Shown here one piece after another: positions 1,938 through 24,247 of a DNA stretch of 32,103 nucleotides. The stretch comes from Bigelowiella natans CCMP2755 (Eukaryota; Protista; Cercozoa): NCBI GenBank assembly GCA_000320545.1, contig ADNK01002335.1, positions 1 to 32,103 of the forward strand, written 5' to 3'. The position numbers were made by a program, and so were the translations under genes. Every line of letters starts with the position of its first letter. Position 1 is the first letter of the stretch. Under the pieces are notes generated by a model. That model was not told where the DNA came from. It saw only the letters and a program-made list of their open reading frames with translations, and did no database searches.

Positions 1938-3622
1938 ATGGAGGCGGCACAATGGCATCGCAACTGCGATGACGACGACGACGAGGAGGAGGACGGGGAC
2001 GAGGATGTGAAAGTCTGCAGCTCGTCACTTCCGGTAGGGCCACAGCAGCCACCATCATTATCACCATCATCATCATCATCATCACCACCACCACCACCAT
2101 TATCATTACATCCCAATAAGCCTTCAAGCTGACTGTGTTTGCCAGGTCCAAATAGGCGTTCCGGGGGAATACATTCGGTCTAGATCCCACGAAACTAAGA
2201 CTACAAGCAAGATTGGGGGAGCACCGGTAGTCGCTCGCTGCTACTGCTACTGCTGCTGCTGCTGCTGCTGCTGTACATATTCTCTTCCGCTCATCATTTC
2301 ATTTGCCAGGTGTGGCTAAGCACAAGCCCACCTCCCCGGGAGTTACTACAGTGCAGCGGATGTAAAAACTATAGAATGAAGCTATTAGCGCAGGTCCTTC
2401 TACCATTGTAGTAGCATCGGCAGAGTTTTGCGATGATGATTGATCTACGCGCGGTTCAGGTCCATGCTCCCGCAACGGAGGGCTGCGAACGGTGTGTGTA
2501 CGTTGTCACATGCCTCAACAAGTCTTGTAAGGTGTGTGCACACATACGCACGCGCGCGCGCTGTGGTATCTTGTGGTGAGAATTGCCATCGTTCTTCTTG
2601 GAACCTTCCTTTTTCCTTCATTAGTCCCCTGGGTTTCATGCCTTCAGCATTGAATGCACTCGTGAGGGAGTAATGAAGGCGGCAGGAACAGGGGGGGGAA
2701 GCAACGATAGTGGGGCGGAGAGCGTAGCTGGTGGAGATAAAGAGACGAAAGGGGGAGGAGGACAGGCCACGATGACAAGGCAGCCACCTGTCGCTAAAGA
2801 GCACGACGACGGTGAGAAGAAAAAGAGGAAGGAGGAGACGGAAAGGGAGATGATGAAAAGGACCAGTGGAACTGACCGCGGTGGCGACGTCAGTAAGAAG
2901 GAAGGGGGTGGGGGGACTGGAGAGAGCGCTTTCGAAGGTGACGACCGAGCAGCAAGCACGCATGAACTATCACCTGTATTGACACGTTGTGCGTGTGCAG
3001 GTGAGGGAGACTGGGGTGTCGATGCAGAAGCCATGGACTGGGGGGGGGGGGGCGGCGATGAGGCAAAATCGGGAGATAGAGACGGCGCTATTGCTCCTCC
3101 CGCTGGCGGTGAAAGCTGTACGAAAGGAGAGGGGCGAAGGAACGAAGGAACAACGCGAGCAACAAGCTGCGAGGACGACGAATGGGGTGTGAGTAGCGAT
3201 TGGGGGGGCGGAGAGTTTGGAACGGAGGGAGTGGAAGGGGAGGAGGACAACGCAGAGAAAGAGCTGGAAGAGCTGCTCGACAGTAGGGAGCGTAAGAAGA
3301 CGACGGAATCGAAGAAAGATTTGGCCAAAGCAGAGACGCAAAAGACGAGAACGACAACAACAACAACACCGGGAACGACTGCTTCATCAACAGCCTCATC
3401 TAATTTCACTTCCAAGGCGGTGGGATCGGGGAAGGATAATAAAACAACCCGGGACTTAGAAAAAAGCAGTAACAACGATAGTAATGGGGGAGAGGGGAGG
3501 GGCGATTACAAGAAGAAGAAGGATTGGGGGGGGTTCAGGCCGTTTTACCTCTGTTTCGAGGAAGAAAGACCGAAAGCGAAGGTGGTGGCTATGATATGAA
3601 TTATGAACGGGTGATAAGGATA

Positions 3623-9186: not shown

Positions 9187-10199
9187 ATGTTGAGAGCTTC
9201 GGTTCGGCTCGCCCTCCTGTCGTTCTCATTGGCTGTCTGGGAGGGCCCGCAGCCGGGCCTATCGTCGGAAGACGGACAAGTTCCGTCCCCACCCGTTTAT
9301 GGTAGGTTAATTAGGTCCTCAGTTGTTGTTTGACTTGACAGTTTACTTCAGGCGCATGCAGCAATTCCTCTGGTTACTCCGTGTTGATGAGGGTTAAATA
9401 CCGATGGACCCCAGCCCAAGTCGAACGTATGGGAAGGCTAATCGAGGAAAATCCGGATATGGACGTCATCATAGCAGTGAATCAGGCAACGCCAGCACTC
9501 GCGAGCATATCCCAAGAAGAAGCCAACGCTGTAGAAGAGCTCCGCCAAAAATTTCACGGACATGTCATTACATATGACGACAACGACCTGATCGCTGAGT
9601 TCCCGACTATTGTAAATGCGAAGCCCGGGTTCGGCAAAATTACTGCGTCCCGATGGGCCCGCAACTACCATGACGAATGCAACTTCGTTGTGCTAAAAAA
9701 ATATCAGGAGATGGTAGGGAGACAGTGGAAGGGATGCGGGGTATGGGTCGTGGAGCAAGACGTAGAGTATACAGGAAAGTTCAGCGAGTTTTTCTATAAG
9801 TACACGGGCCGGGCTGATATGATCGGGTATCGTCACTTCACGCATAACTTCAGTGACATGATCCACGGTGTGCGCTGCTCCACGCTGGCGTTCCGCTCAA
9901 AGTTCGTGATCGAAAATCGAGCACACGGCTACGAGGAGCACCTGTCATATTTCTCCAGAGCGCTTCTGAAAACCTTTTCCTCCGAGATGCACGAAGGGCG
10001 GCATTGCCACAGCGAGATTGGGTCGCCCACGATGGCCCTAGTCAACGGCTTCTCGTACCAAAATTTCGATCGCGTCGACGTGGATGTCGAGAACTATAGC
10101 TATAAGGCAAAGCTTGGAGATTGGAGACAGATGAAGAATCATGTAAAAGCTCTGCGCTCAAGCGGAAGGAAGTTATTGGTTCATCCTTGCAAATACTAA
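9187..10199 (+). CDS. DUF3405-like secreted/Golgi-lumenal protein (putative glycosyltransferase-like), paralog A; one intron at 9302-9351
   Basis: Signal-peptide-like MLRASVRLALLSFSLAVW (exon 9187-9301), then a 50-nt GT-AG intron in phase with ORF 9381..10199. Motifs GVWVVEQDVEYTGKFSEFF and terminal LLVHPCKY resemble DUF3405 (W..E.DV.YTG.W..FF ... L.HP.K). A clear paralog lies at 29129-30166. Confidence 0.7.
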
Positions 10200-10399: not shown

Positions 10400-10562
10400 T
10401 ACCAATGCGCTACATCGCATTATAGCGCACACTGCGTCCACATACAGCATGAGTGCTAGAGTGTGTAAACCGCAGTATAGAAGTCTAGAAGTGCACAGCT
10501 ACCTAGTAGCTACCAATGCGCTACATCGCATTATAGCAGACACTGCGTCCACATACAGCATG
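10400..10562. repeat. 52-bp direct repeat, two copies 111 bp apart
   Basis: taccaatgcgctacatcgcattatagc(gc/ag)acactgcgtccacatacagcatg at 10400-10451 and 10511-10562, differing at two adjacent positions. Confidence 0.92.
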
Positions 10563-11092
10563 CTAGCATGAGTGATCGTATACGGACAGTGCGATCGATG
10601 GATGTACGTGTTGCGAACAGATGCTATGTGGCGTCTGAAGTAGAGGAGCACCAATGCGTCGTGCTGCGTTGTTACGTACGACGTGCTGCTATATGCACAC
10701 ACGCCGCGTGTGCTAGCGTGCTGCATGCGATCGATGTGCATGATGTCCAATTTTGGAACATTCTAGCATTTGCACGTAGGCACGGCAATGAGGATGAGAA
10801 GTAAGGAAGGTTTCTGCGTTCACGATGCATGTTTGTGCGCATGCTCCACGCACTGCTAGACTGCACCTGCCATGCAAAACAGCATACAAGTTGCAGCGCT
10901 ACGGGACAACGCAATGCTCAGTCCACTAGCTAAGCTGTGAAGGTGAGCGGTGAAGAGCTTCGCGAAGTGCACACTCACTTGTGGTTCAAATTGATGTCGT
11001 GTCCTGGTCATTCGGTACATTGTTGACATTCACCAATCTAGCAATGGGTGTTCGATTTCTTGGAACAACGCAACACAGGCATCACCACGTGT

Positions 11093-11422
11093 CTAGGCAT
11101 GCTTGGAGGAATCGATGGCATGCTGGTCGAATTCTGCAAAGATGGGCTCCATCTTTTTGTTTTCGACGGCGGATACGATGTGAACGGCAACCTTCCTCGG
11201 ATGGGACGCGATGCTGGCGCACTTGCGCATGAACTTGTCCTGAATGTACTTCAAGCAATGATCGTACGAGTTTGCGGACTTCTCTTCGACATCCGGAAAG
11301 CACACACTGAGCGGCACGACTCTACGCGCGGATGGAGACAAACAAAGAGAGGCGAACAACGTCAATTTCACGGAGGTACAAACACGCCAAAAAAATCGGT
11401 TCTCTTGCTCTGTAATCCAGTC

Positions 11423-11461
<39 letters not shown>

Positions 11462-12961
11462 TTCTCTTTTTTTTGGCGCTGTCATCATGTCATCCTCACC
11501 TGATTTTCTCCTTGAAGAGATCGTCTTTATTGAACAGCACCGAGATCGGGATGCCGTGCAGCACGGGGTCCCGGCACACCTTCTCGAAGTTCTGCAGCTG
11601 CATGCAGAGGGCGTTGTTGGTGTGCTTGTCGTCCACCTGTCAAGGAGGAGAAGAAGAAGAAGAAGAAGATGATGATGATGATGACGAAGAAGAAGACGAA
11701 GAAGAGATGTATAAATGGTAGCGACGAGGTAACCAAGTAAAGGAAACAGCGAATAACCAAAATCTAACATGGAATGGGAAAATAGTGAGTGGGTAGGTCC
11801 GGTGTTGGTGAAGACAGATGCCCTGCTCATCAGTACTTTTCGCTGATGACCCTTACTGTTGGATGGACGTTGGGCGCATGAGAATGAATGACTACCTGAT
11901 CGTACGTGCTGAGGTCCACGACGAAGAATATTCTCGTGTGCTTCGAGAGATACTTGACCCAGCTGATGTAGAAATGATAGATGTATTCATCAGTGTGTGT
12001 ATGTGTGTGTGTACGCGTGTGTGTGCGTTGGTCGTCGATATATCAGATAGTAGGCAACGATATCCTCGTTGTTTGACTCGTAGCGTTGTATCTATTCGCG
12101 CGCTGCGTGCTTGCGTGAATGCGCACCCGCGATTCTCGATCGTGTCATTTTCGCCAGAGAGGTCCACCAACTTAATTTCCAGCTGTCGACCAAAACAACA
12201 CCACAACGCACTTTAAGATAAGCGGAACTCGGAGGTGGAAACTATCTTAGAAAGGAAATTGTCTAATTTATATGCAAGAAAGAGGATCTTTTTTCTCTGT
12301 CGTAGCTCGCGTCGTTAACGGTTACTTTCTTCTGGTTGATCTCGAAGCCGAAGGAGACAACCCGCAGCGCTCCCTTGGCGTTCTGCTCCGGCCAGCGAAT
12401 GATGTCTTCATCGCTCGGTAAGTACCCGTCGGACTGTGCGGCCGCCAGTAATAAATAAAGAACGAACGAATCAATACGGCGATCAAAATCGCATTGTCAT
12501 CGGTGGCGCAGAGACGCAACATTAGCAACGAAAATGACGATGATGACACGACGATGATGGCGGCATGCTCACGCCCCGTCACTACTAGGAGCACGATATC
12601 AGCTTCGGAATAGCGTCCAGACGGTTTGCACAACTACCTTGGGATTATGTTTGCCGCTGCTGTCGCTGCTCCTCTTAGAATCGGCTATAGATCCTTTTGT
12701 GCTCTCCTCCGCAATCGTCTCGGTGCGTTCGAAGAAGTAAGCTGCAGAGTCACCCACGCTGTACCTGAGGCGTTCATGCACAAAGAACCTCTCAAATGCG
12801 CGAAATCGCAATTGCCTTCACCCCAAGAAACAGATTCTCGCCTCGGTCGGTGGAAATCGCGGGAGGGAAGATTTTAAATGTCGTGCTCCTCGTCTATGAA
12901 GCCCGTGATTAGAGATGTTCTTCACGCTCATATGTACACATGGGTACATCCAATCTTTACT

Positions 12962-13004
<43 letters not shown>

Positions 13005-13542
13005 TCATACGTTCCGAAATGATATCTGAGCGCATAGGCCTTCTTGATGCTCTCCTGAGCCCACAGTTGTGCGATGGCCTTGCCAAGCTTGGCCGAGAAC
13101 TGCAAGCTCTCCTACGATTTGGGGGGGGGGAGGGAGGGGGGATGAGAAACATGTGTTGATATTCACATATGATGAGCGAAGGCACTTAGCATAGACCATC
13201 CCCCCCCCCTCTCCTCTTTGCCCCTCTCTTTTCCCAGGCAACAGTCTTGGTATTGAGTGATCCTCACCGTTCTATGTAGCTCCTTCCAGGCGTCCTCAAT
13301 TGTCTATCAGTGCGGGTGCGCGAGATGCGTTTGTGAGTGATGTTAAATTTTTACGTGTAGATATACGAATAAACTAATTTCATTGTTTCGTTTTTTTGTG
13401 GGAAGCATAGTTGGGATCTGAATCGGGGATGCCACTCGAGATGATGTTGTTTGCGTTTGCGAGCACGATGATTATGGCGTGCCTCACCTCAATCGCTTCT
13501 TGGCATTTGTCTCCGAGATCGAATTGCTTGAAGAACCTTTAA

Positions 13543-13583
<41 letters not shown>

Positions 13584-13678
13584 GGAGAGAGAGGGAGGTG
13601 ATATTAAACCATCGATAAGGTGTCGGTGGAGGCTGTGTATGTGGTACCCCATCACCCCCTCCCCCTCTCCACCCCCAA

Positions 13679-13709
<31 letters not shown>

Positions 13710-14364
13710 ACCATCATCACCACCACCACCATTGGCAGCATCATCATAATCTTCGTCTCGTGCTCCACAAACGCGCTAGCCCACGCACTCATTCTTCCAA
13801 TCTTCGAGCTGCTTCGGGTTGATGAGGCTCTTTTGCTTGGCCTTGAGCTCCTCCGCAATGGCAACAATCGCGGGAACCTTGTCCAGATCGTTCTGCGCCT
13901 CGATCAGCAGCTGTCGGTAGCGGTGGAACATGTCGCCACACCTGGAGGAGAGGAGGGAGGGAGGGGGCGGGAAGCAGGGGAAGTTAGGTGGGTGATTTGT
14001 GGTTGGGGGTATCGAGCGAAGATAATAATGTTTTCCCAAAAAATCGTGATCTCGAGTCGTTGTTGCGCCTTACTCTGCCTTAGAGCTAAGATGCCTCTCC
14101 AAGAGCTGCAGAGACTCCTTGCGGTTGCTCGTCTTCAACATCCCTTTTATCTGCCCTATCAGGCCCGATTCACTCATACCGTGCGACTGTATTGGTCAGG
14201 AAGGGGGGGTGGGGGGGGGGGGGGGATGGTGAGAATACACGCTGCTATTCGTTTTCAGGTGAGTGCTGGGGAGGGCACGGTGAAGATGCGATCGGGTTCA
14301 GAAAGACCTTCTGGCGAAGGCGATTGCAATGATAGATCATCCGTCTCATTGCCACTATGACCCT

Positions 14365-14406
<42 letters not shown>

Positions 14407-14952
14407 TCCATGTCCCCCCCTTAAAAGCTTTCAAAAAATTGGGGGGGATGTCTGAACAATAACCCAAACCCCCCCCCCCCCACACACACACACAAACACA
14501 CAAGCATACGATGCAATAGCCACATGTAGCTGTCGCACACTCTCTTCGTCGCAACAAAAAAAGGAACCAGCGACAGCAGCAGCAGTAGCGACAACAACTG
14601 GTGAAAAACAACGACGACAACTACCAACCCTTTGTAAATCAATTCTCTACACTTGACACGGTGCTCATCCAAGTTGCGCTTGCAGTGACGCATCAGCTGA
14701 AGACACATAGCATTATCGTATTAGCTGTAGCAACACACAACTCTCTCTCTGCTCTCTCTCTCTCTCTCTTTCTATGTACACTCACATGTGTATGGGAGAG
14801 GGGGGAGAAAGGCGAAACTGCTGTCAGCATTTAAGTATATCAGCATCGCGGCCCTCCATCACCTGCTTCCTCACTGTCGACTTTCCTGACCCCAAATGAC
14901 CGACAAGAAGAATCTGCAACGACACACACACACACACACAGGAGGGGAAGAA

Positions 14953-14983
<31 letters not shown>

Positions 14984-15145
14984 TTTAAATATGGAACAAA
15001 TCGAAATAGTTTAAAAAAAAAAAAAAAATGAATAAAAGCGGTCGTTGCAGCAGGCCAAGGTTCCAACAAAGTGCGTGTAAACACCTCAATCTCGAGGTTA
15101 TGCATCTTCTTCTCGATCTCCTTCTTGTCAATGATCTTCTCATAC
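11093..15145 (-). other. G-alpha domain portion of the giant gene
   Basis: G1 ILLVGHLGSGKSTVRKQ (14913-14863). Helical domain IAQLWAQESIKKAYALR and GDSAAYFFERTETI. YLPSDEDIIR (12433-12326). G3 KLVDLSGE (12182-12127). IFFVVDLSTYDQ (11962-11896). G4 VLFNKDDLFKEKI (11636-11500). PLSVCFPD...LKYIQDKF...G5 HIVSAVE. The motif order is that of heterotrimeric G-alpha. Confidence 0.92.
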
Positions 15146-15466
15146 CTAGCAAGAAGAAAACTGTACATGAGTGGGGGGGGAAGAGTTGGCAACAAATATT
15201 CCTAGCCAGGTGGGAGGCACGTAGTTATCCTTGCTTCACGCACCCTCACGATCTATTCCTCTCGCCTCTTCTCCTCTCCCTCTATATGGGATGATGATAT
15301 GCACGTGTCTGTGTGCGTGCTCTCGATGATTGGGGCCTTACTGTCTGAAGACTCTCCTTCGGCACTTGCTGTCTTTCGTCGTCGCGAAGTTCTGCATCAG
15401 ACTCCAGACATCCCTCTCCTCAAGCAATCTGACATTTTAAGGAAAATTCACAGAGATTGTAATGTC

Positions 15467-15518
<52 letters not shown>

Positions 15519-18500
15519 TCAGAGAGGCGGAGCACCAATGCATGCATTGCTGGCCCTTTTTCACACTGACGACACCTGTGCTTCTCCTGTAGCAACGACA
15601 TGAAGGCGGTGGTTTCTCCCAGAAGAGGGATCTCCTTGAGGAGCAGCTCAACGCTCGACTTGATCTTCTTCGAGAGGGCGTTCTTCTCCACACCGAGGTG
15701 GTCCATCGCCGAGAGGCGCAGCTGCTGCAGAAAGAGCAGTGCTTTCTTAAGGAGGGCGACCTCGACGTGGATGTTCTTGAGCCACACACTCCCCACGGAC
15801 CGCAGCGTCATGGGCGCCACCGTGCGCGGAGTTGCCGGGGCGCTCTTCGACCGAATCCGCGAGGATCTGGGGCTTCCTGTCCCTCCTTCCCCTGGGCCGT
15901 CCTCCAGAATCTTCTCCCTACGCTGTCTGAGGGCGCTCTCGAGTGCTCGCTGGTCCAGCACGAACCCAGCTGAGTCCGCACCCCCCTCGCCGCCGTGGAG
16001 GTCGCTGTCCTCGCGCACCTGCAGCGCGTGGATGCAGAGCCGCTTGGAGTTGATGAGGTGCTCGTCGTCAAGGCCACGCATCTCGCGGCGGAACATGTAT
16101 TCCTTGGCGGTCGGGTCCGGGATGAACAGCTTCTTCGACGGCGTCTGCAGCACCAAGCACTCGGCCAGCTTCACAAGGTGCGCCGTGTTGTTCCAGAGGC
16201 AGTTCAGGTGCGGGGTCAGCTCGGAGGAGAACTCGGCGATGTGGTACTGCGCCGTGGTGATGATCGAAAGAAGGATCTGGTGCATGAGCTTGATGCTGGT
16301 GGAGTGGCACGGGGCCATGACCGCCAGGATTGTGGATCGGATGACGCTTGCGAACCCGGAGAGGTTGCGGTTTGACAGCGCCTGCCAATGCAGGGTGTTG
16401 ATGATGGTGATCAGATATGCCTGGCACCTGCTGGCTAAAGAGCTGCGGATGGATGGGATGTCAAAGAGCAGGGGTAGCAGGCTTGTCTGCCACTTGGAGC
16501 ACCCCATCAGTGTCTCGCAGTTGACTGTGTTCTTCACCAGGATGTAGAGGATGTCTTTCACGCTGTTATTCGAACGGGGGGGGGGGAGATGGGGGGAGAA
16601 GATAAAGAAGATCAGGTCCCAGTAAATTAATGCTGTGCACCCGTTGTGCGTGTAAGTATGAATGATGCAGAACGCGGAAGAAAAAATGGACCGAAAATTC
16701 ACCAAAATCATCCTTATTTTGTGTTGTGGGCTCAAGCGCTTATTTCACTGAATCATTGATTTTTGAGATGTTGCAGTTTGAAAGAAATCATCATCATTAT
16801 CTTTTTCTTCTTTTTCATATCCTCGTCATCATCATCATCATCATCATCATCGTCGTCGTCGTCGTCGTCGTCGTCATCGTCATTATCATCATTATCACAA
16901 ATCCACAAAGCAAGCAATGACTAACCCTTGGAGCCTCGGGTAGATGTGGCTACCATTGAGGTTCGCAAAGACGGCGAGCCAGACGCTCGGGTTCTGCACG
17001 TGCCGGTCACTCTGCCTGAAGGTCCGCCCGATGTCGCTGTTCAGCTTTTCGATGGGCGTCGTGAGGATGCCGAGAAGGGCCTTGTGGATCTGCAAGATCT
17101 TGTCGATCGAGACCGAGGACGTGATGGTGGCTATGTAGCGAGCAAACTTGACGCCCAGCGTCTCCGGATTGACGGCGCAGGCCAGGCGCTGCTTCGTGAC
17201 CAGGAGCAGCCAAAGGACTCGCAGTCCGAGCGACTCCCCCTTCTCCCCCATGACATGGTTTTGGATGGCCTCGATGAGCGTCTCGACGACCTCGGACCGC
17301 GTGTCGATCAGGTAGCGAAACACCATGAGCTGCTCGTCGATATCCAGCATGGAGGTCATGTCCTTGGTGATGCGCGTGTTCTTGAAGCTCAGTGCGGTGG
17401 TGTGGTCGCCCTGAGCCCAGGAGATGATCTTGCGGTGCCTCCCCTTCGGCGTTTCAGCCGTCGCCTTCGCATCTGGCTGCTCGGTAGCTTTGAAGTTCCC
17501 CAGGTTGCTGAAGCTGTCCATGAGCTTCGCAGAAGAAGGAGCGCCCGTGGGCTTGAGAGAGCCCCTCTTCCGACTCATCTGGCTGTTGAGGATGGCCATC
17601 CGGACCTTTGAGCGTTCTATAGATTTTGGCGGCGGCGGCGGCGGAAATTTCTTTAGATTCGGGGAGCTGACGGACGTTGCAGAGCGCTTGTGCTTCTTAT
17701 TATGCTGCCGCCGCTCTGTCTTCTGCGGGTTCACAGCAAGATGCTTCATCTTGGGTGGCGGGGGTGGGGGAGGGCGGCGCGGCGAGCGCGAGCCTTTGCG
17801 TCTCGAAGGCGAAACAGAACCGCGGCGCATCCTTGAGGGGGGAACTCGCGAGGAGACTGCCGTTGTCGCCGGTGACGCGAGTCGCCTGGAAGAGGGTCCT
17901 ATAGCTCCTCCCCCCCCTCCTCCAACTTCCCCAATCGTCCTTCTAGATGTGGACAAATCCATTGGCTTCCCTCCTTCCGTCCCGTGGAGAGTAGAGCCAC
18001 TGACAGGGAGGTTGACGCTGGAGTACCTGATGATGATGAGTGAGGATGAGGGTGATGAAGATGAAGATGAAAGTGATTCAGGTTGCTTATAATCATTGGT
18101 GTGAGAGGGCGATTTGCGTTGTTGCCTCCACGTCTCCTTCCTCCCCTTGATGTTCAAAGTGCCTCTCCTCGTTACTACCCTTATTGGCCTAGATACCCCC
18201 TCCCCCCTCCTCCCCCTCGTGCACATTATGTAGTAGTAAGGAGTGGTAGTAGTAGTTGCAGTACTCAGTAGCGTCGATTTGGTTGTGCGAGCTCGTCGGT
18301 CCATAGCCGCCTTGCCGCAGGGCCTTTTTGATATCGGCATCTGAGCGGATGCTGCTCGGGTTCTCGCTGTTGCGGCGGCTGGGGTTTCGGAGGTTCACGC
18401 GCCGCCGCCCGGATGGATCTAACCGCGGCGTGACGGAGCCCCATTTGCTGACGTTCACTTGGGGGTCTGCAAAGACGAGTAGAGAGAAGGAGCGGGAAAG

Positions 18501-18769
18501 AGCGGGGGGGAGAAAGGATCAGGGAGTCAAAAGGAGGGTTCGTTCGAAGATGGTCGTGTTATTTTAGTGCTTGACCAACTCCATGCCCTATCCCTGCTGC
18601 ATCCCCCCACGGGAACACCATTACTAGGCCCCTGTCCTATGCTACTTACCGCCCGCTTGGCTTTCGGCTCGGGGAGGAGAAATCAGCAGGTGAATGAATA
18701 ACCGCAGGATGGTCTCGTTGTTTGTGAAATGAGTCAGTAGCTTCTTCAACAGGCCCTGGCAATGTAGTA

Positions 18770-18805
<36 letters not shown>

Positions 18806-20426
18806 TGGTGTGCATGTGAATCATGAATACCTAGCGCTGTACATCAGGGTGGCAAATGTACGCTATTAATATTCTCCAATAGTGATAATAAGGAAGGAGC
18901 ACAACCGCAGGAATCTATGTCCTCTCCCCCCCCCCCCCCCTCCCCTCCTCCTCCTCCTTCACTTCCCTTCTCTATTCTACTATCATTTACCTGGTTACCG
19001 AGACCTAGCTTATAGAGCTCAGAACCGAACACGTTCTCCTCATCCGTCACCGTGCTGCGACAAAGCATCGCTTTAGGCAAGAGCAAGCGTGGAATGTACT
19101 CCAAGATACTTTCTTAACCTATCTGCCCCTCTCCCTCTCCCTCTCTCTCTTTCTCTATCTCTCCCAGTCACCCTCAGGGTGGAGCAAATACAAACCTCTC
19201 TCCAAGATGATTAGGCTGGTTTTGTTTTCCCTCCTGGTGCCAGAATGTCTTCAGCCATGTCGGAGCTTGCGTGCGGTCTGATGGTTGATATTTGTGGACG
19301 CGTCGTACGTGATATTTAAGGGAGCGTGATGATGTGGATAGCTAATAGGCTGCGAATATGCACAAATATGAGTATTAAAACCTTTCGAGGCCCTCTTCCG
19401 ATCTCCGCCTCGTCGCACGTGCGATATAAGCTCACCAATCATCTGCCGAAGGGATATACATCAGAAAAGACAACGAAAATGGGATACATCGGCAGTTGCT
19501 TTCGGTGTGAAATTAACCTTCGACCATTGCAGAGCACCCTCCGGTGTCGTATCCATAAGCTTTAATACCCTGAAGACAATAACACGGTCATATATACAAA
19601 TTGATAAATAAATAAATATTTTACATATGTAACGGGACCTATCGTCAGTGATGATGTCAAACCGACGCCCTGCTTTCTTAGGCAAGAGGTTCACACTCAA
19701 AATATCCGCCACTGACACAAACCCTGAGAATTACGAGGATGTCAGATGAAATAACGATCCATTCAGAATAATCACAGAAGCCGCACCCAATGGGAAGTTT
19801 TCGCCAGGATTCTTGTACCACGTCAGAGAATTGCTGCCGATAACGAAGTACCTGCCGGTCAACACACCATTGTCACCTAGAGGCTCTGAATTCCAGATGA
19901 GACATGGTATCTAAGGGTGCAATGGTACCGTTTCTCCCATCCAACGAAGTTTGCGTTCTTCTTCATCAAGAACCCCGCTTTAAGCGTCGTCGAAATCCCT
20001 TCCGATTCTACGTTTCATTTTGTTTTCAAACATGGGTGTCATACGTAGGAACTGGGCAATGGTCTGATCATACCCCAGATATAAAGATTACCTGCATTGG
20101 AGTGGCAGTGGCCAACACTTCGAATGGCCTCGAGGATTTTCTTCTTCTGCTTCTCCAACCCGCTTTTATCTAGCAAAGCAATTCCCTTGCCGAAGTTGAT
20201 GAAAGACTTCTTTTTTCTATGCCGCCTCGAAATCATATTCTTCCCTTATAGCTTACTTCCTTATACGTGTGTCGTAGCGATCATCGATATCACTTCTGCG
20301 GCATAAATTATGAGCACTTGCATAAGAACATTTATCAACACCCAAGACGTTACGACTGGGCAGAGCAAAACGTGATACCCCGTGCTTCACGTCAAAAAGG
20401 TATTTCTCATCATAGATTATTTCCAT
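11093..20426 (-). CDS. Extra-large multi-domain G-protein alpha-like protein (PH - Pro/Ser-rich linker - neurobeachin/BDCP alpha-solenoid - G-alpha); more than 20 exons; 5' end uncertain (about 20430-20610)
   Basis: A phase-compatible GT-AG exon chain can be followed from the PH exons through two long exons (18024-16926, 16561-15575) into RLLEERD...RRVFRQ | YEKIIDKKEIEKKMHNLEIE | ILLVGHLGSGKSTVRKQ and on to the stop at 11093. No intervening stop or intergenic-type sequence was found. Confidence 0.78.
13548..13706. repeat. (GA)n and (CT)n microsatellites facing each other within one intron
   Basis: (AG)n at about 13548-13591 and (CT)n at about 13679-13706. Confidence 0.9.
15575..17350 (-). 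other. Neurobeachin/LRBA (BDCP, DUF4704-like) alpha-solenoid region of the giant gene
   Basis: GLRVLWLLL...HKALLGILT...VQNPSVWLAVFANL...RLQGVKDILYILVKNTVNCETLMGCSKWQTSLLPLL parallels, from memory, neurobeachin/LRBA ALKAMGYFL...YNVLFEIL...IQNPQILKVIATLL...RRAFLSDMIKLFNNSRENRRSLLQCSVWQEWMLSL. Confidence 0.68.
16824..16895. repeat. Compound (CAT)n(CGT)n trinucleotide microsatellite, intronic; similar trinucleotide tracts at about 2055-2100, 2240-2273, 3622-3655, 11648-11705, 18765-18803, 21923-21953 and 28027-28132
   Basis: Direct reading of the sequence. Confidence 0.9.
19515..20007 (-). other. PH domain (four exons) near the N-terminus of the giant gene
   Basis: LKAGFLMKKNANFVGWEKR | YFVIGSNSLTWYKNPGENFPLG | FVSVADILSVNLLPKKAGRRFDIITDDR | VLKLMDTTPEGALQWSK fits the canonical K.G.L.K...W..RYF.L....L.YYK...P.G.I...F.I.T..R...W PH pattern. 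Confidence 0.9.
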
Positions 20427-21135: not shown

Positions 21136-21921
21136 ATGTCAACGAAGGTTTACAAGAAAACGACGTATGTGGCCTCCCAGCTCACCGAGGCTCAGAGGAT
21201 GGAGATCATGAAGAAGATAATGACAGGTTTGTTCATTTGGGGATGGGGTCTTCACTTTCGGTGTCGTGACGCACTTGAACTCCTTTGAAAACGGAAGGAA
21301 AAGTAAATATGGTGAGATAACCACCCCGGAAATCCTTTTTATCTCAGGCGCAATGACACAAGAGGAAGCTTACGCAGCTGTGGTCAAAGATGCGCAGGTC
21401 ACGCCTCCCCCACTTCACTAGTGACCTGCTTCGAAAGAGGCATTATCAGATGATGTGAATTCACACTAATGACTATTGTTTTGAATAACCTCAGAAATCA
21501 GCCGATGTCAAGCCCACAGGTCATTATATTGGGGGCCCTTGTTTGAATTATTTAAAAAAAAGAAAAATGGAAGCATCCCCCCCCCCAATAAAAGTAAATA
21601 TCGTACTCCTCCTCTCTGTAGATCGCCTGCAAGTCTCGAAGGAAAAGAACTGGCTGGCATACATCAAGAAAGAGAAGCTATTCGAGGTGCGTTTGCGTTT
21701 CAGATCACTTCCCTATGTTTGGAATCGGCACGCTGTTGGGGGGGGGGGGAGCGCGACAGCTTCTATTTAAAAAAAAATCTGGATCCTTCATGAATCTCTT
21801 CCAACATAAATTACAGAAAGTAATATTCTCGGACTATGTGATGAAGATCAACGCCCAAGGACGCAAGCAACAGCGCATCATCGTCATCACAAATATAGCC
21901 CTGGTATGGTAAAATGCGTGT

Positions 21922-23392: not shown

Positions 23393-24247
23393 TCTATATA
23401 TATAACTATATATACACACAACACATAAAAATATTAATATGCTGATATCTCTATGCACGTGACAGGTACTTAGCAGAGAACGGAATGGAGGGCGAGGAGG
23501 TCCAATTCGCTGAGAAGATCACGAAGATCAACTCCTGGGGACGGCGTCAAACCAGACTCGTGGCTATCACTAACAAAGCTATGGTGTCTAATGATGCAGT
23601 GGCACCACAGCAGCAGCAGCGCCTGATTGCATTCTATTTTGTATTCGACGTGTACACGACACACACGCGCGCAGGATATCGTGATAAAATATACACACGT
23701 GTTTTATAGTAATCATGTTGGTGTTCGTATCTATCGTAGTATAACCTCTCGGATAGAGCCGAGGTGAAGAGACGGGTCTCTCTAGAAAGGTAAGCAGCAA
23801 GACGATACTTACCTCTCATTCTCCCACCCCTGCGTCGAGTCACCTATCGACGCCATCGTCGGAAAAGACGAAGAGGACGTTGACGATGGTTTTCGCACTG
23901 CTACTGCTGCTGCTACATGGTGATTACGTGCAGGATTCGAGGGATGACTATCAGCACAGGCTCAAACGAATTCGTCGTGGTAGTAGTAGCAGCAGCAGCG
24001 CCTAACATCTGATCATCACCATCATCATCGTTGAGGACGGTGCAATGTACTAAACAACAACCCAACTTTCCGCGCAACTACTTCGCGCGCTGCTAGCACG
24101 TGCCCTCAGAGTACGACTACTGGTTCGAAACCCCGCTCCGTGGTGCGGTGATCTCTGTCTTCAAAAGCCACACTGCACACGGCCTCACGGTATGCTTAGA
24201 TGCCTGTGTTGTTTGTAAGGTTTTATGGGAAATATTCATACGAAATG

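What the first reader, a model, noticed from the sequence alone, without database searches (positions are those of the whole stretch)
11093..20426. Giant PH - neurobeachin-solenoid - G-alpha fusion: a candidate new class of extra-large G protein
Seen: one in-phase exon chain joins a PH domain, a Pro/Ser/Arg-rich linker, a helical region resembling the neurobeachin/LRBA alpha-solenoid and a complete C-terminal G-alpha fold (roughly 1,500 aa by manual estimate). Established: normal G-alpha subunits are about 350-400 aa and are anchored by N-terminal lipidation. Plant XLGs have a Cys-rich N-terminal extension, not PH/BEACH-type domains. In BEACH proteins the solenoid is followed by PH-BEACH-WD40. 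Inference: here the BEACH-WD40 end is replaced by G-alpha and PH may replace lipidation, giving a membrane-trafficking scaffold with a built-in nucleotide switch. I do not recognise this architecture from any described protein.
Basis: partly seen in the sequence, partly recalled or inferred. Interest (0 to 1): 0.88.

Follow-up and report, generated by a model that had tools for sequence, protein, structure and literature searches.

The report
Giant enzymatically degenerate G-alpha fusion protein
This marine alga makes one 1,500-residue protein that joins a membrane-binding PH domain and a helical scaffold to a G-protein alpha subunit that has lost the residues needed to cut GTP; it belongs to an apparently undescribed family of giant G proteins, separate from the plant ones.

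Summary
The fusion is real. It is Bigelowiella natans gene Bigna1|79189: 28 exons on the minus strand, start 20236 (not 20426), stop 11093, 1,508 aa. One spliced RNA contig runs from the PH exons into G-alpha. Pfam: PH (E 4e-07), weak DUF4704 solenoid (6.5e-04; 13 of 15 relatives match), G-alpha (1.3e-50). The layout recurs in Amorphochlora, Gymnochlora, Chlorarachnion and unnamed marine transcriptomes; B. natans has about six paralogs.

Correction: this copy is probably not a working switch. The Gly42, Arg178, Thr181 and Gln204 positions of G-alpha-i1 are Leu, Pro, Asn and Glu, and three orthologs are similarly degenerate. Sister paralogs keep all five G boxes, one adds RGS + GYF, and others end at the first G-alpha strand. 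'BEACH end replaced by G-alpha' overstates it: only an internal solenoid piece is shared, without ConA, PH-BEACH or WD40, so a trafficking role is unsupported.

Best reading: a PH-anchored pseudo-G-alpha scaffold or decoy, convergent with plant XLGs. No paper found. The scan earlier noted what appears to be the RGS-bearing paralog on another contig (s1-707992).

The parts
11093..20236 (-). Whole gene (B. natans Bigna1|79189; P0001), 28 exons, 1,508 aa. Exons high-low: 20236-20092, 20007-19929, 19851-19787, 19723-19639, 19569-19518, 19442-19382, 19277-19196, 19054-18991, 18755-18650, 18466-18265, 18026-16926, 16562-15576, 15428-15342, 15145-15085, 14913-14863, 14696-14629, 14362-14308, 14186-14074, 13941-13789, 13536-13488, 13303-13268, 13111-13011, 12764-12638, 12433-12326, 12182-12127, 11962-11896, 11636-11500, 11321-11093
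20092..20236 (-). Basic N-terminus (12 K/R in residues 1-35; Ile at position 2, first Cys at 44, so no lipidation motif), conserved in the degenerate-type orthologs
19427..19981 (-). Classical PH domain, aa 58-148 (PF00169, E 4e-07, above cut-off); 81% identical to the Amorphochlora ortholog
18656..19391 (-). Conserved segment after PH, aa about 160-245 (probably helical), present in all full-length chlorarachniophyte members, absent from the Cercozoa M6MM protein
17410..18458 (-). Low-complexity Ser/Pro/Arg linker, aa about 250-520, poorly conserved. In paralog C2963 this slot holds RGS + GYF_2; no RGS or GYF remnant is detectable here
16117..17335 (-). Alpha-solenoid core, aa 545-830, distantly related to the C-terminal part of DUF4704 (neurobeachin/BDCP); confident all-helical AF2 model (pLDDT 87, pTM 0.86)
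15373..15802 (-). Solenoid end, aa about 935-1029 (57-68% identical in orthologs), after a disordered insert; leads into the family-wide D-x2-3-RRK/R-x-F junction motif
15085..15373 (-). Junction helix equivalent to G-alpha alphaN (aa about 1030-1058), shorter than in the canonical paralogs
14877..14901 (-). G1/P-loop, aa 1064-1072, GHLGSGKST: Lys and Ser kept, Gly42-equivalent is Leu1066
12640..14669 (-). Enlarged G-alpha helical domain (G1-to-switch-I span 241 aa against 120-132 in single B. natans G-alpha)
12376..12406 (-). G2/switch I, aa 1320-1330: catalytic Arg178-equivalent is Pro1325, Thr181-equivalent is Asn1328
12149..12164 (-). G3/switch II, aa 1353-1358: DxxG kept, catalytic Gln204-equivalent is Glu1357; Trp211-equivalent (Trp1366) kept just downstream
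11520..11531 (-). G4 NKxD intact (aa 1423-1426). G5 in the last exon keeps the Ala only (S-A-V for C-A-T)

Best explanation
SHOWN: one expressed gene for a 1,508-aa PH - solenoid - G-alpha protein. It belongs to a chlorarachniophyte family that is split into canonical-G-alpha, RGS-bearing, degenerate (this gene) and G-alpha-truncated branches. INFERRED FROM ESTABLISHED G-ALPHA CHEMISTRY: this copy cannot hydrolyse GTP normally and does not cycle as a switch (Gly42>Leu, Arg178>Pro, Thr181>Asn, Gln204>Glu). INFERRED, UNTESTED: the basic N-terminus and PH domain hold it on acidic membrane lipid in place of myristoyl/palmitoyl anchors. The dead G-alpha module acts as a fixed-shape binding surface that holds or sequesters partners of the cell's many G-alpha and RGS proteins (G-beta-gamma, RGS, or partners of its active paralogs). 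The solenoid provides a further protein-binding platform. It would thus work like a plant XLG decoy, reached independently.
For: RNA contig continuity. Pfam domains. G-box comparison with G-alpha-o/i. The same loss of switch I/II motifs in three orthologs that form a 100/100 clade on a long branch, while G4 and the fold are kept. Solenoid and PH are more conserved (50-81%) than the G-alpha part (27-59%) among orthologs, as expected if the scaffold is the constrained part. A sister branch has lost the GTPase domain altogether but keeps the junction helix and first strand in several species. No Gly2/Cys lipidation site in any full-length member seen. Precedent: XLG2 lacks the same catalytic residues, binds GTP poorly, yet binds G-beta-gamma and RGS (10.1101/795088; PMC8584482). 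B. natans has an expanded G-alpha set and 39 RGS proteins (PMC3971589).
Against: No biochemical data. The B. natans copy keeps P-loop Lys/Ser, DxxG and NKxD, so it may still bind nucleotide. The alphaN-equivalent helix is shortened and capped by the solenoid, and switch II keeps only the Trp of the G-beta contact patch, so G-beta-gamma binding is uncertain. G-gamma was not detected in the genome (an uninformative search). The PH domain has Glu where the K-Xn-(K/R)-X-R phosphoinositide motif (from my own knowledge) wants a basic residue. Domain packing in the AF2 model is unreliable (pTM 0.47).
Confidence: 0.55

Rival explanations
1. Locked-on form: the module still loads GTP but cannot hydrolyse it, so it keeps the attached solenoid or an effector permanently in the active state.
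For: Lys1070, Ser1071, Asp1353, Gly1356, NKxD and the G5 Ala are kept in the B. natans protein; Gly42, Arg178 and Gln204 changes block hydrolysis in G-alpha-i1.
Against: The Mg-binding Thr is lost. The three orthologs have Arg for the P-loop Lys and have lost DxxG, so nucleotide binding is not a conserved property of the clade.
Confidence: 0.22
2. One reading: a BEACH-derived membrane-trafficking coat or scaffold with a working nucleotide switch.
For: DUF4704-like solenoid; BDCPs are trafficking adaptors (PMC11554844). The canonical paralogs (P0007, P0011, P0018, P0006, contig C2963) keep all five G boxes, so the switch half may hold for them. The GYF_2 seen in some paralogs occurs, from my own knowledge, in endosomal RME-8.
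Against: Four catalytic or switch residues are lost in this copy. ConA, PH-BEACH and WD40 are absent, and cargo binding maps to PH-BEACH. The solenoid fold matches only generic HEAT/ARM repeats. The genome retains ordinary BEACH genes on at least six contigs.
Confidence: 0.12
3. The G-alpha module of this copy is a decaying relic on the way to loss, as in the truncated paralogs, and only PH + solenoid matter.
For: Long branch (1.71 changes per column); truncated paralogs exist; G-alpha is the least conserved folded part.
Against: The whole 450-aa module, with NKxD and the hydrophobic core, is kept in frame in four orthologs from at least two genera, at 27-59% identity.
Confidence: 0.1
4. Artefact: two or more adjacent genes joined by the model.
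For: None remaining.
Against: Single spliced contigs in three studies, and the same order in transcript-derived and genomic proteins of other genera.
Confidence: 0.01

Closest known systems
Plant extra-large G proteins (XLG1-3)
   Same: C-terminal G-alpha domain with a long N-terminal extension; Gly42, Arg178 and Gln204 equivalents substituted (XLG2); plausible nucleotide-independent decoy role.
   Different: The extension is PH + solenoid (about 1,030 aa), not a Cys-rich/NLS region. Rhizarian, with close paralogs that keep a canonical G-alpha. P-loop Lys kept here, lost in XLG2. Helical domain about 100-120 aa larger than in single G-alpha.
Canonical heterotrimeric G-alpha (Gi/o-like; PF00503)
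   Same: Ras-like plus helical-domain fold (Foldseek E about 1e-10, TM by target up to 0.75); G1 pattern, DxxG, NKxD.
   Different: Four times longer, no lipidation site, catalytic Arg/Gln and switch-I Thr lost, enlarged helical domain.
BEACH-domain proteins (neurobeachin/LRBA/NBEAL)
   Same: Distant sequence similarity to the C-terminal part of DUF4704, including a WQxWL-type motif shared with the B. natans BEACH protein on contig C2762.
   Different: No ConA, PH_BEACH, BEACH or WD40; classical PH at the N-terminus; only a segment of about 60-170 aa aligns.
B. natans paralog on contig C2963 (PH-RGS-GYF_2-solenoid-G-alpha)
   Same: Same PH, post-PH segment, solenoid, junction motif and enlarged helical domain.
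   Different: It carries RGS (E 1e-09) and GYF_2 in the linker slot, and all five G boxes are canonical.

Membership tests
G-alpha (PF00503) | Profile match above cut-off over nearly the full domain | tested here: met
   172.8 bits vs 48.8, profile 8-329/333
G-alpha (PF00503) | Ras-like domain with inserted helical domain | tested here: met
   AF2 model and Foldseek hits to Gi/Gq/Gt
G-alpha (PF00503) | G1 GxxxxGKS/T with Gly42 | tested here: inconclusive
   Pattern met, Gly42 is Leu; orthologs have Arg for Lys
G-alpha (PF00503) | Switch I catalytic Arg and Mg-binding Thr | tested here: not met
   Pro1325 and Asn1328
G-alpha (PF00503) | Switch II DxxGQ catalytic Gln | tested here: not met
   DxxG kept, Gln is Glu1357
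G-alpha (PF00503) | G4 NKxD | tested here: met
   aa 1423-1426
G-alpha (PF00503) | N-terminal myristoylation or palmitoylation site | tested here: not met
   Ile2, first Cys at 44
G-alpha (PF00503) | GTP binding/hydrolysis and G-beta-gamma binding | not testable with these tools
   needs biochemistry
Plant XLG | Cys-rich N-terminal region with NLS | tested here: not met
   N-terminal part is PH + linker + solenoid; XLG definition
Plant XLG | Descent from plant GPA1 | not tested
   No plant sequences in my trees; organism is a rhizarian
Plant XLG | Degenerate catalytic motifs in a C-terminal G-alpha | tested here: met
   it works like an XLG in this respect without being one
BEACH-domain proteins | BEACH domain with PH_BEACH and WD40 | tested here: not met
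   No such Pfam hit in any family member; no BEACH match on the window's contig
BEACH-domain proteins | ConA-like domain before DUF4704 | tested here: not met
   Absent; present in the organism's own BDCP
BEACH-domain proteins | DUF4704 alpha-solenoid | tested here: inconclusive
   Weak but consistent: 13 of 15 members match, best E 5.4e-10, window protein at or just under the cut-off; Atlas top hit 0.94-0.95; hhalign E 8.7e-4 but only 23% probability; structure searches generic
Classical PH (PF00169) | Profile match above cut-off | tested here: met
   31 bits vs 25.1
Classical PH (PF00169) | Phosphoinositide binding | not testable with these tools
   Basic motif only partly present (own knowledge of the motif)

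The most novel reading that the evidence does not exclude
The family is a new class of one-chain G-protein machine: the BDCP-derived solenoid is an effector or regulator wired in cis to its own G-alpha (with an optional built-in RGS). The window's gene is a hard-wired, nucleotide-independent version that tunes its active paralogs, and the G-alpha-less paralogs are the end of the same series.
Probability: 0.25. Interest if true: 0.85.

Novelty: new variant of a known kind. Interest (0 to 1): 0.63.

Why it matters
The reviews I could read treat extra-large G-alpha proteins as plant-specific. This family looks like an independent second origin, with a different extension (PH + BDCP-like solenoid). 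In one genome it offers a natural series: canonical G-alpha, G-alpha with its own RGS, pseudo-G-alpha, and G-alpha lost except for the junction helix. That series makes it directly testable how a G-alpha switch turns into a nucleotide-independent scaffold, which is the debated point for XLGs. It also gives a first handle on a DUF4704-like solenoid outside BEACH proteins.

Tried and rejected
Searches used single exons by reference, or P0001, the full-length protein that a tool returned. The joined model served only inside scripts for phase, length, residue numbering and one pairwise comparison with P0001. The raw-read run X22 gave only 11 reads and was uninformative. Three word-index homolog searches added no new members, so the taxonomic range is a lower bound. 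The solenoid has no clear relative among solved structures by sequence or fold. A GYF_2 or RGS remnant in the window protein's linker was tested and not found. ATG 20426 with a 40-nt intron is in frame but lacks RNA depth, and two runs read through that intron. The G-gamma search was blank and uninformative. The trees neither prove nor reject one origin of the fused G-alpha (79/70 support; AU p 0.54). Anantharaman et al. 2011 could not be read, nor the supplements of PMC3971589. Ten paper searches found no description of the architecture; subscription papers are not covered.
Full report
Identity and gene model. The window is contig C1402 of a 91.4-Mb, 3,736-contig assembly. The protein is Bigelowiella natans jgi|Bigna1|79189 (P0001, 1,509 aa). 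From splice sites listed by coordinate I built a 28-exon minus-strand model with GT-AG at every intron and one open frame of 1,508 aa, from ATG 20236 to the stop at 11093. It equals P0001 except that JGI skips exon 13303-13268 and extends exon 11962-11896 by 13 codons. Orthologs have residues matching the skipped exon and lack the extension. Following the operators' rule, the joined model was not searched: searches used single exons by reference or the tool-returned P0001.

Expression as one transcript. Assembled contigs of three runs from three studies show 13 spliced GT-AG joints between 14696 and 20092. One 4,684-nt contig starts at 20260 and passes PH, linker and solenoid. It reaches 15339 at record position 3,143, exactly as the model predicts (3,140 at 15342 plus the 3-base ambiguity). 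Its remaining length fits the G-alpha exons plus a 133-nt 3' UTR. A loose end at 14628 reads into exon 14362.

Domains. Pfam on P0001: PH 58-148 (E 4e-07), DUF4704 651-747 (E 6.5e-04, 19.1 bits against a 22.9 cut-off), G-alpha 1041-1498 (E 1.3e-50). The solenoid link is weak for any one protein but consistent. Thirteen of 15 family members match DUF4704 (best E 5.4e-10). The language-model search puts DUF4704 first for two members (0.94 and 0.95). The family profile aligns with the DUF4704 tail of the organism's own BEACH protein (E 8.7e-4, probability 23%), against E 0.32 for a control region. AF2 gives a confident all-helical solenoid (pLDDT 87, pTM 0.86) whose structural matches are only generic HEAT/ARM repeats. 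The solenoid-plus-G-alpha model (pLDDT 72.6, pTM 0.47) matches Gi/Gq/Gt structures at E about 1e-10.

It is not a BEACH protein with a swapped tail. Only the C-terminal part of DUF4704 aligns, and ConA, PH_BEACH, BEACH and WD40 are absent. In the B. natans BDCP on C2762 about 970 aa lie between DUF4704 and PH_BEACH, against about 290 aa before G-alpha here. Ordinary BEACH genes remain on at least six contigs. In human BDCPs cargo tails bind the PH-BEACH part (PMC11554844), so a trafficking role cannot be carried over.

The G-alpha of this copy is degenerate. Aligned to G-alpha-o/i: Gly42 is Leu1066, Arg178 is Pro1325, Thr181 is Asn1328 and Gln204 is Glu1357. Lys46, Ser47, Asp200, Gly203, Trp211, NKxD and the G5 Ala are kept. 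Three orthologs (P0002, P0003/P0015 from Amorphochlora, P0004) have lost the same residues, and also carry Arg for the P-loop Lys and lack DxxG. They form a 100/100 clade on a long branch. Gly42, Arg178 and Gln204 are the positions whose loss blocks hydrolysis in G-alpha-i1 and marks plant XLG2 as a decoy (10.1101/795088).

Family. A full HMMER search with one exon found 12 proteins. PH, solenoid and G-alpha occur in this order in Gymnochlora (P0007), Chlorarachnion (P0011), Amorphochlora (two types: P0015 and P0018), unnamed marine transcriptome contigs (P0002 with L046, P0005) and a marine metagenome contig (P0006, with N-terminal matches upstream). P0006, P0007, P0011 and P0018 keep all five G boxes. 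B. natans has about six members: this gene; C2963 (PH-RGS-GYF_2-solenoid-canonical G-alpha); C2112; C969; and C484 and C2461, which carry GYF_2 and a degenerate RGS and stop at a remnant of G-alpha strand beta1, as do P0009 and Lotharella P0010 at their C-termini. The fused G-alpha domains measured, except C969, share a helical domain of 225-298 aa against 120-132 in single G-alpha. With the shared solenoid, this favours one fusion event; the trees allow it but do not show it (79/70; AU p 0.54). A G-alpha-less PH-solenoid protein in Cercozoa sp. M6MM leaves the ancestral state open. Word-index searches added nothing.

Mechanism. Shown: the architecture, its expression and conservation, and the loss of catalytic motifs. 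Inferred from known G-alpha chemistry: no normal GTP cycle in this copy. Inferred and untested: the basic N-terminus and PH replace lipid anchors (no Gly2 or early Cys), and the dead G-alpha plus solenoid act as a fixed binding platform or decoy within a G-protein network that is expanded in this organism (PMC3971589). The main rival is a GTP-loaded, locked-on form.

Novelty. Ten literature searches found no description of the architecture. De Mendoza et al. note the B. natans G-alpha expansion, but the passages I read mention no such fusion. Their supplements and Anantharaman 2011 were not available. The domain combination is already visible in automatic Pfam annotation of public proteins. 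The scan noted the RGS-bearing paralog earlier (s1-707992); I had found it independently before looking. That note says relatives keep the RGS layout; in my data the canonical relatives P0007, P0008 and P0011 have no RGS hit. Verdict: a real, conserved, apparently undescribed extra-large G-alpha family convergent with plant XLGs. The window's gene is its pseudo-GTPase branch. New variant of a known kind, interest 0.63.

Noticed in passing
window 21137 onward (+), exons 21817-21903 and 23467-23583: Head-to-head neighbour about 900 bp from the start codon, with at least two repeated Myosin_TH1-like segments (E 1.8e-4 and 7.3e-3); looks like a tandem TH1-repeat protein, and no motor domain was seen in the part read.
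   Followed up: partly
   Followed up: partly
G000:C484:33500-38200 (+) and C2461:61340-64970 (-); P0009; P0010 (Lotharella globosa): G-alpha-less branch: (PH)-degenerate RGS-GYF_2-solenoid proteins that stop right after the alphaN-like helix and a remnant of G-alpha strand beta1; seen in genome and transcript-derived proteins. P0010 is a fragment that shows only the solenoid and this end.
   Followed up: partly
G000:C969:22280-24400 (+) (L041): Paralog with only the solenoid end recognisable, followed by a canonical-type G-alpha with a normal-size helical domain (136 aa span); it groups with the canonical fused clade.
   Followed up: partly
G000:C2112:43000-51200 (+) (L042, L043): Intron-rich paralog with PH, solenoid and G-alpha exons resembling the canonical type.
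   Followed up: partly
L035:8001-12148 (P0012, Cercozoa sp. M6MM): PH-solenoid protein with the RRKxF junction motif but no G-alpha, in an unclassified cercozoan; leaves the ancestral state open.
   Followed up: partly
window 9381-10199 (+): Intronless ORF of about 270 codons with a weak DUF3405 hit (E 0.0035), in an otherwise intron-rich region.
   Followed up: no
window 20216-20257: Possible 40-nt intron or alternative 5' exon: runs X2 and X7 read through it, while an X1 contig joins 30 unplaced letters at 20217.
   Followed up: partly
window about 10400-10960: Degenerate repeated non-coding sequence just downstream of the 3' end (for example, a motif near 10405 recurs near 10515).
   Followed up: no
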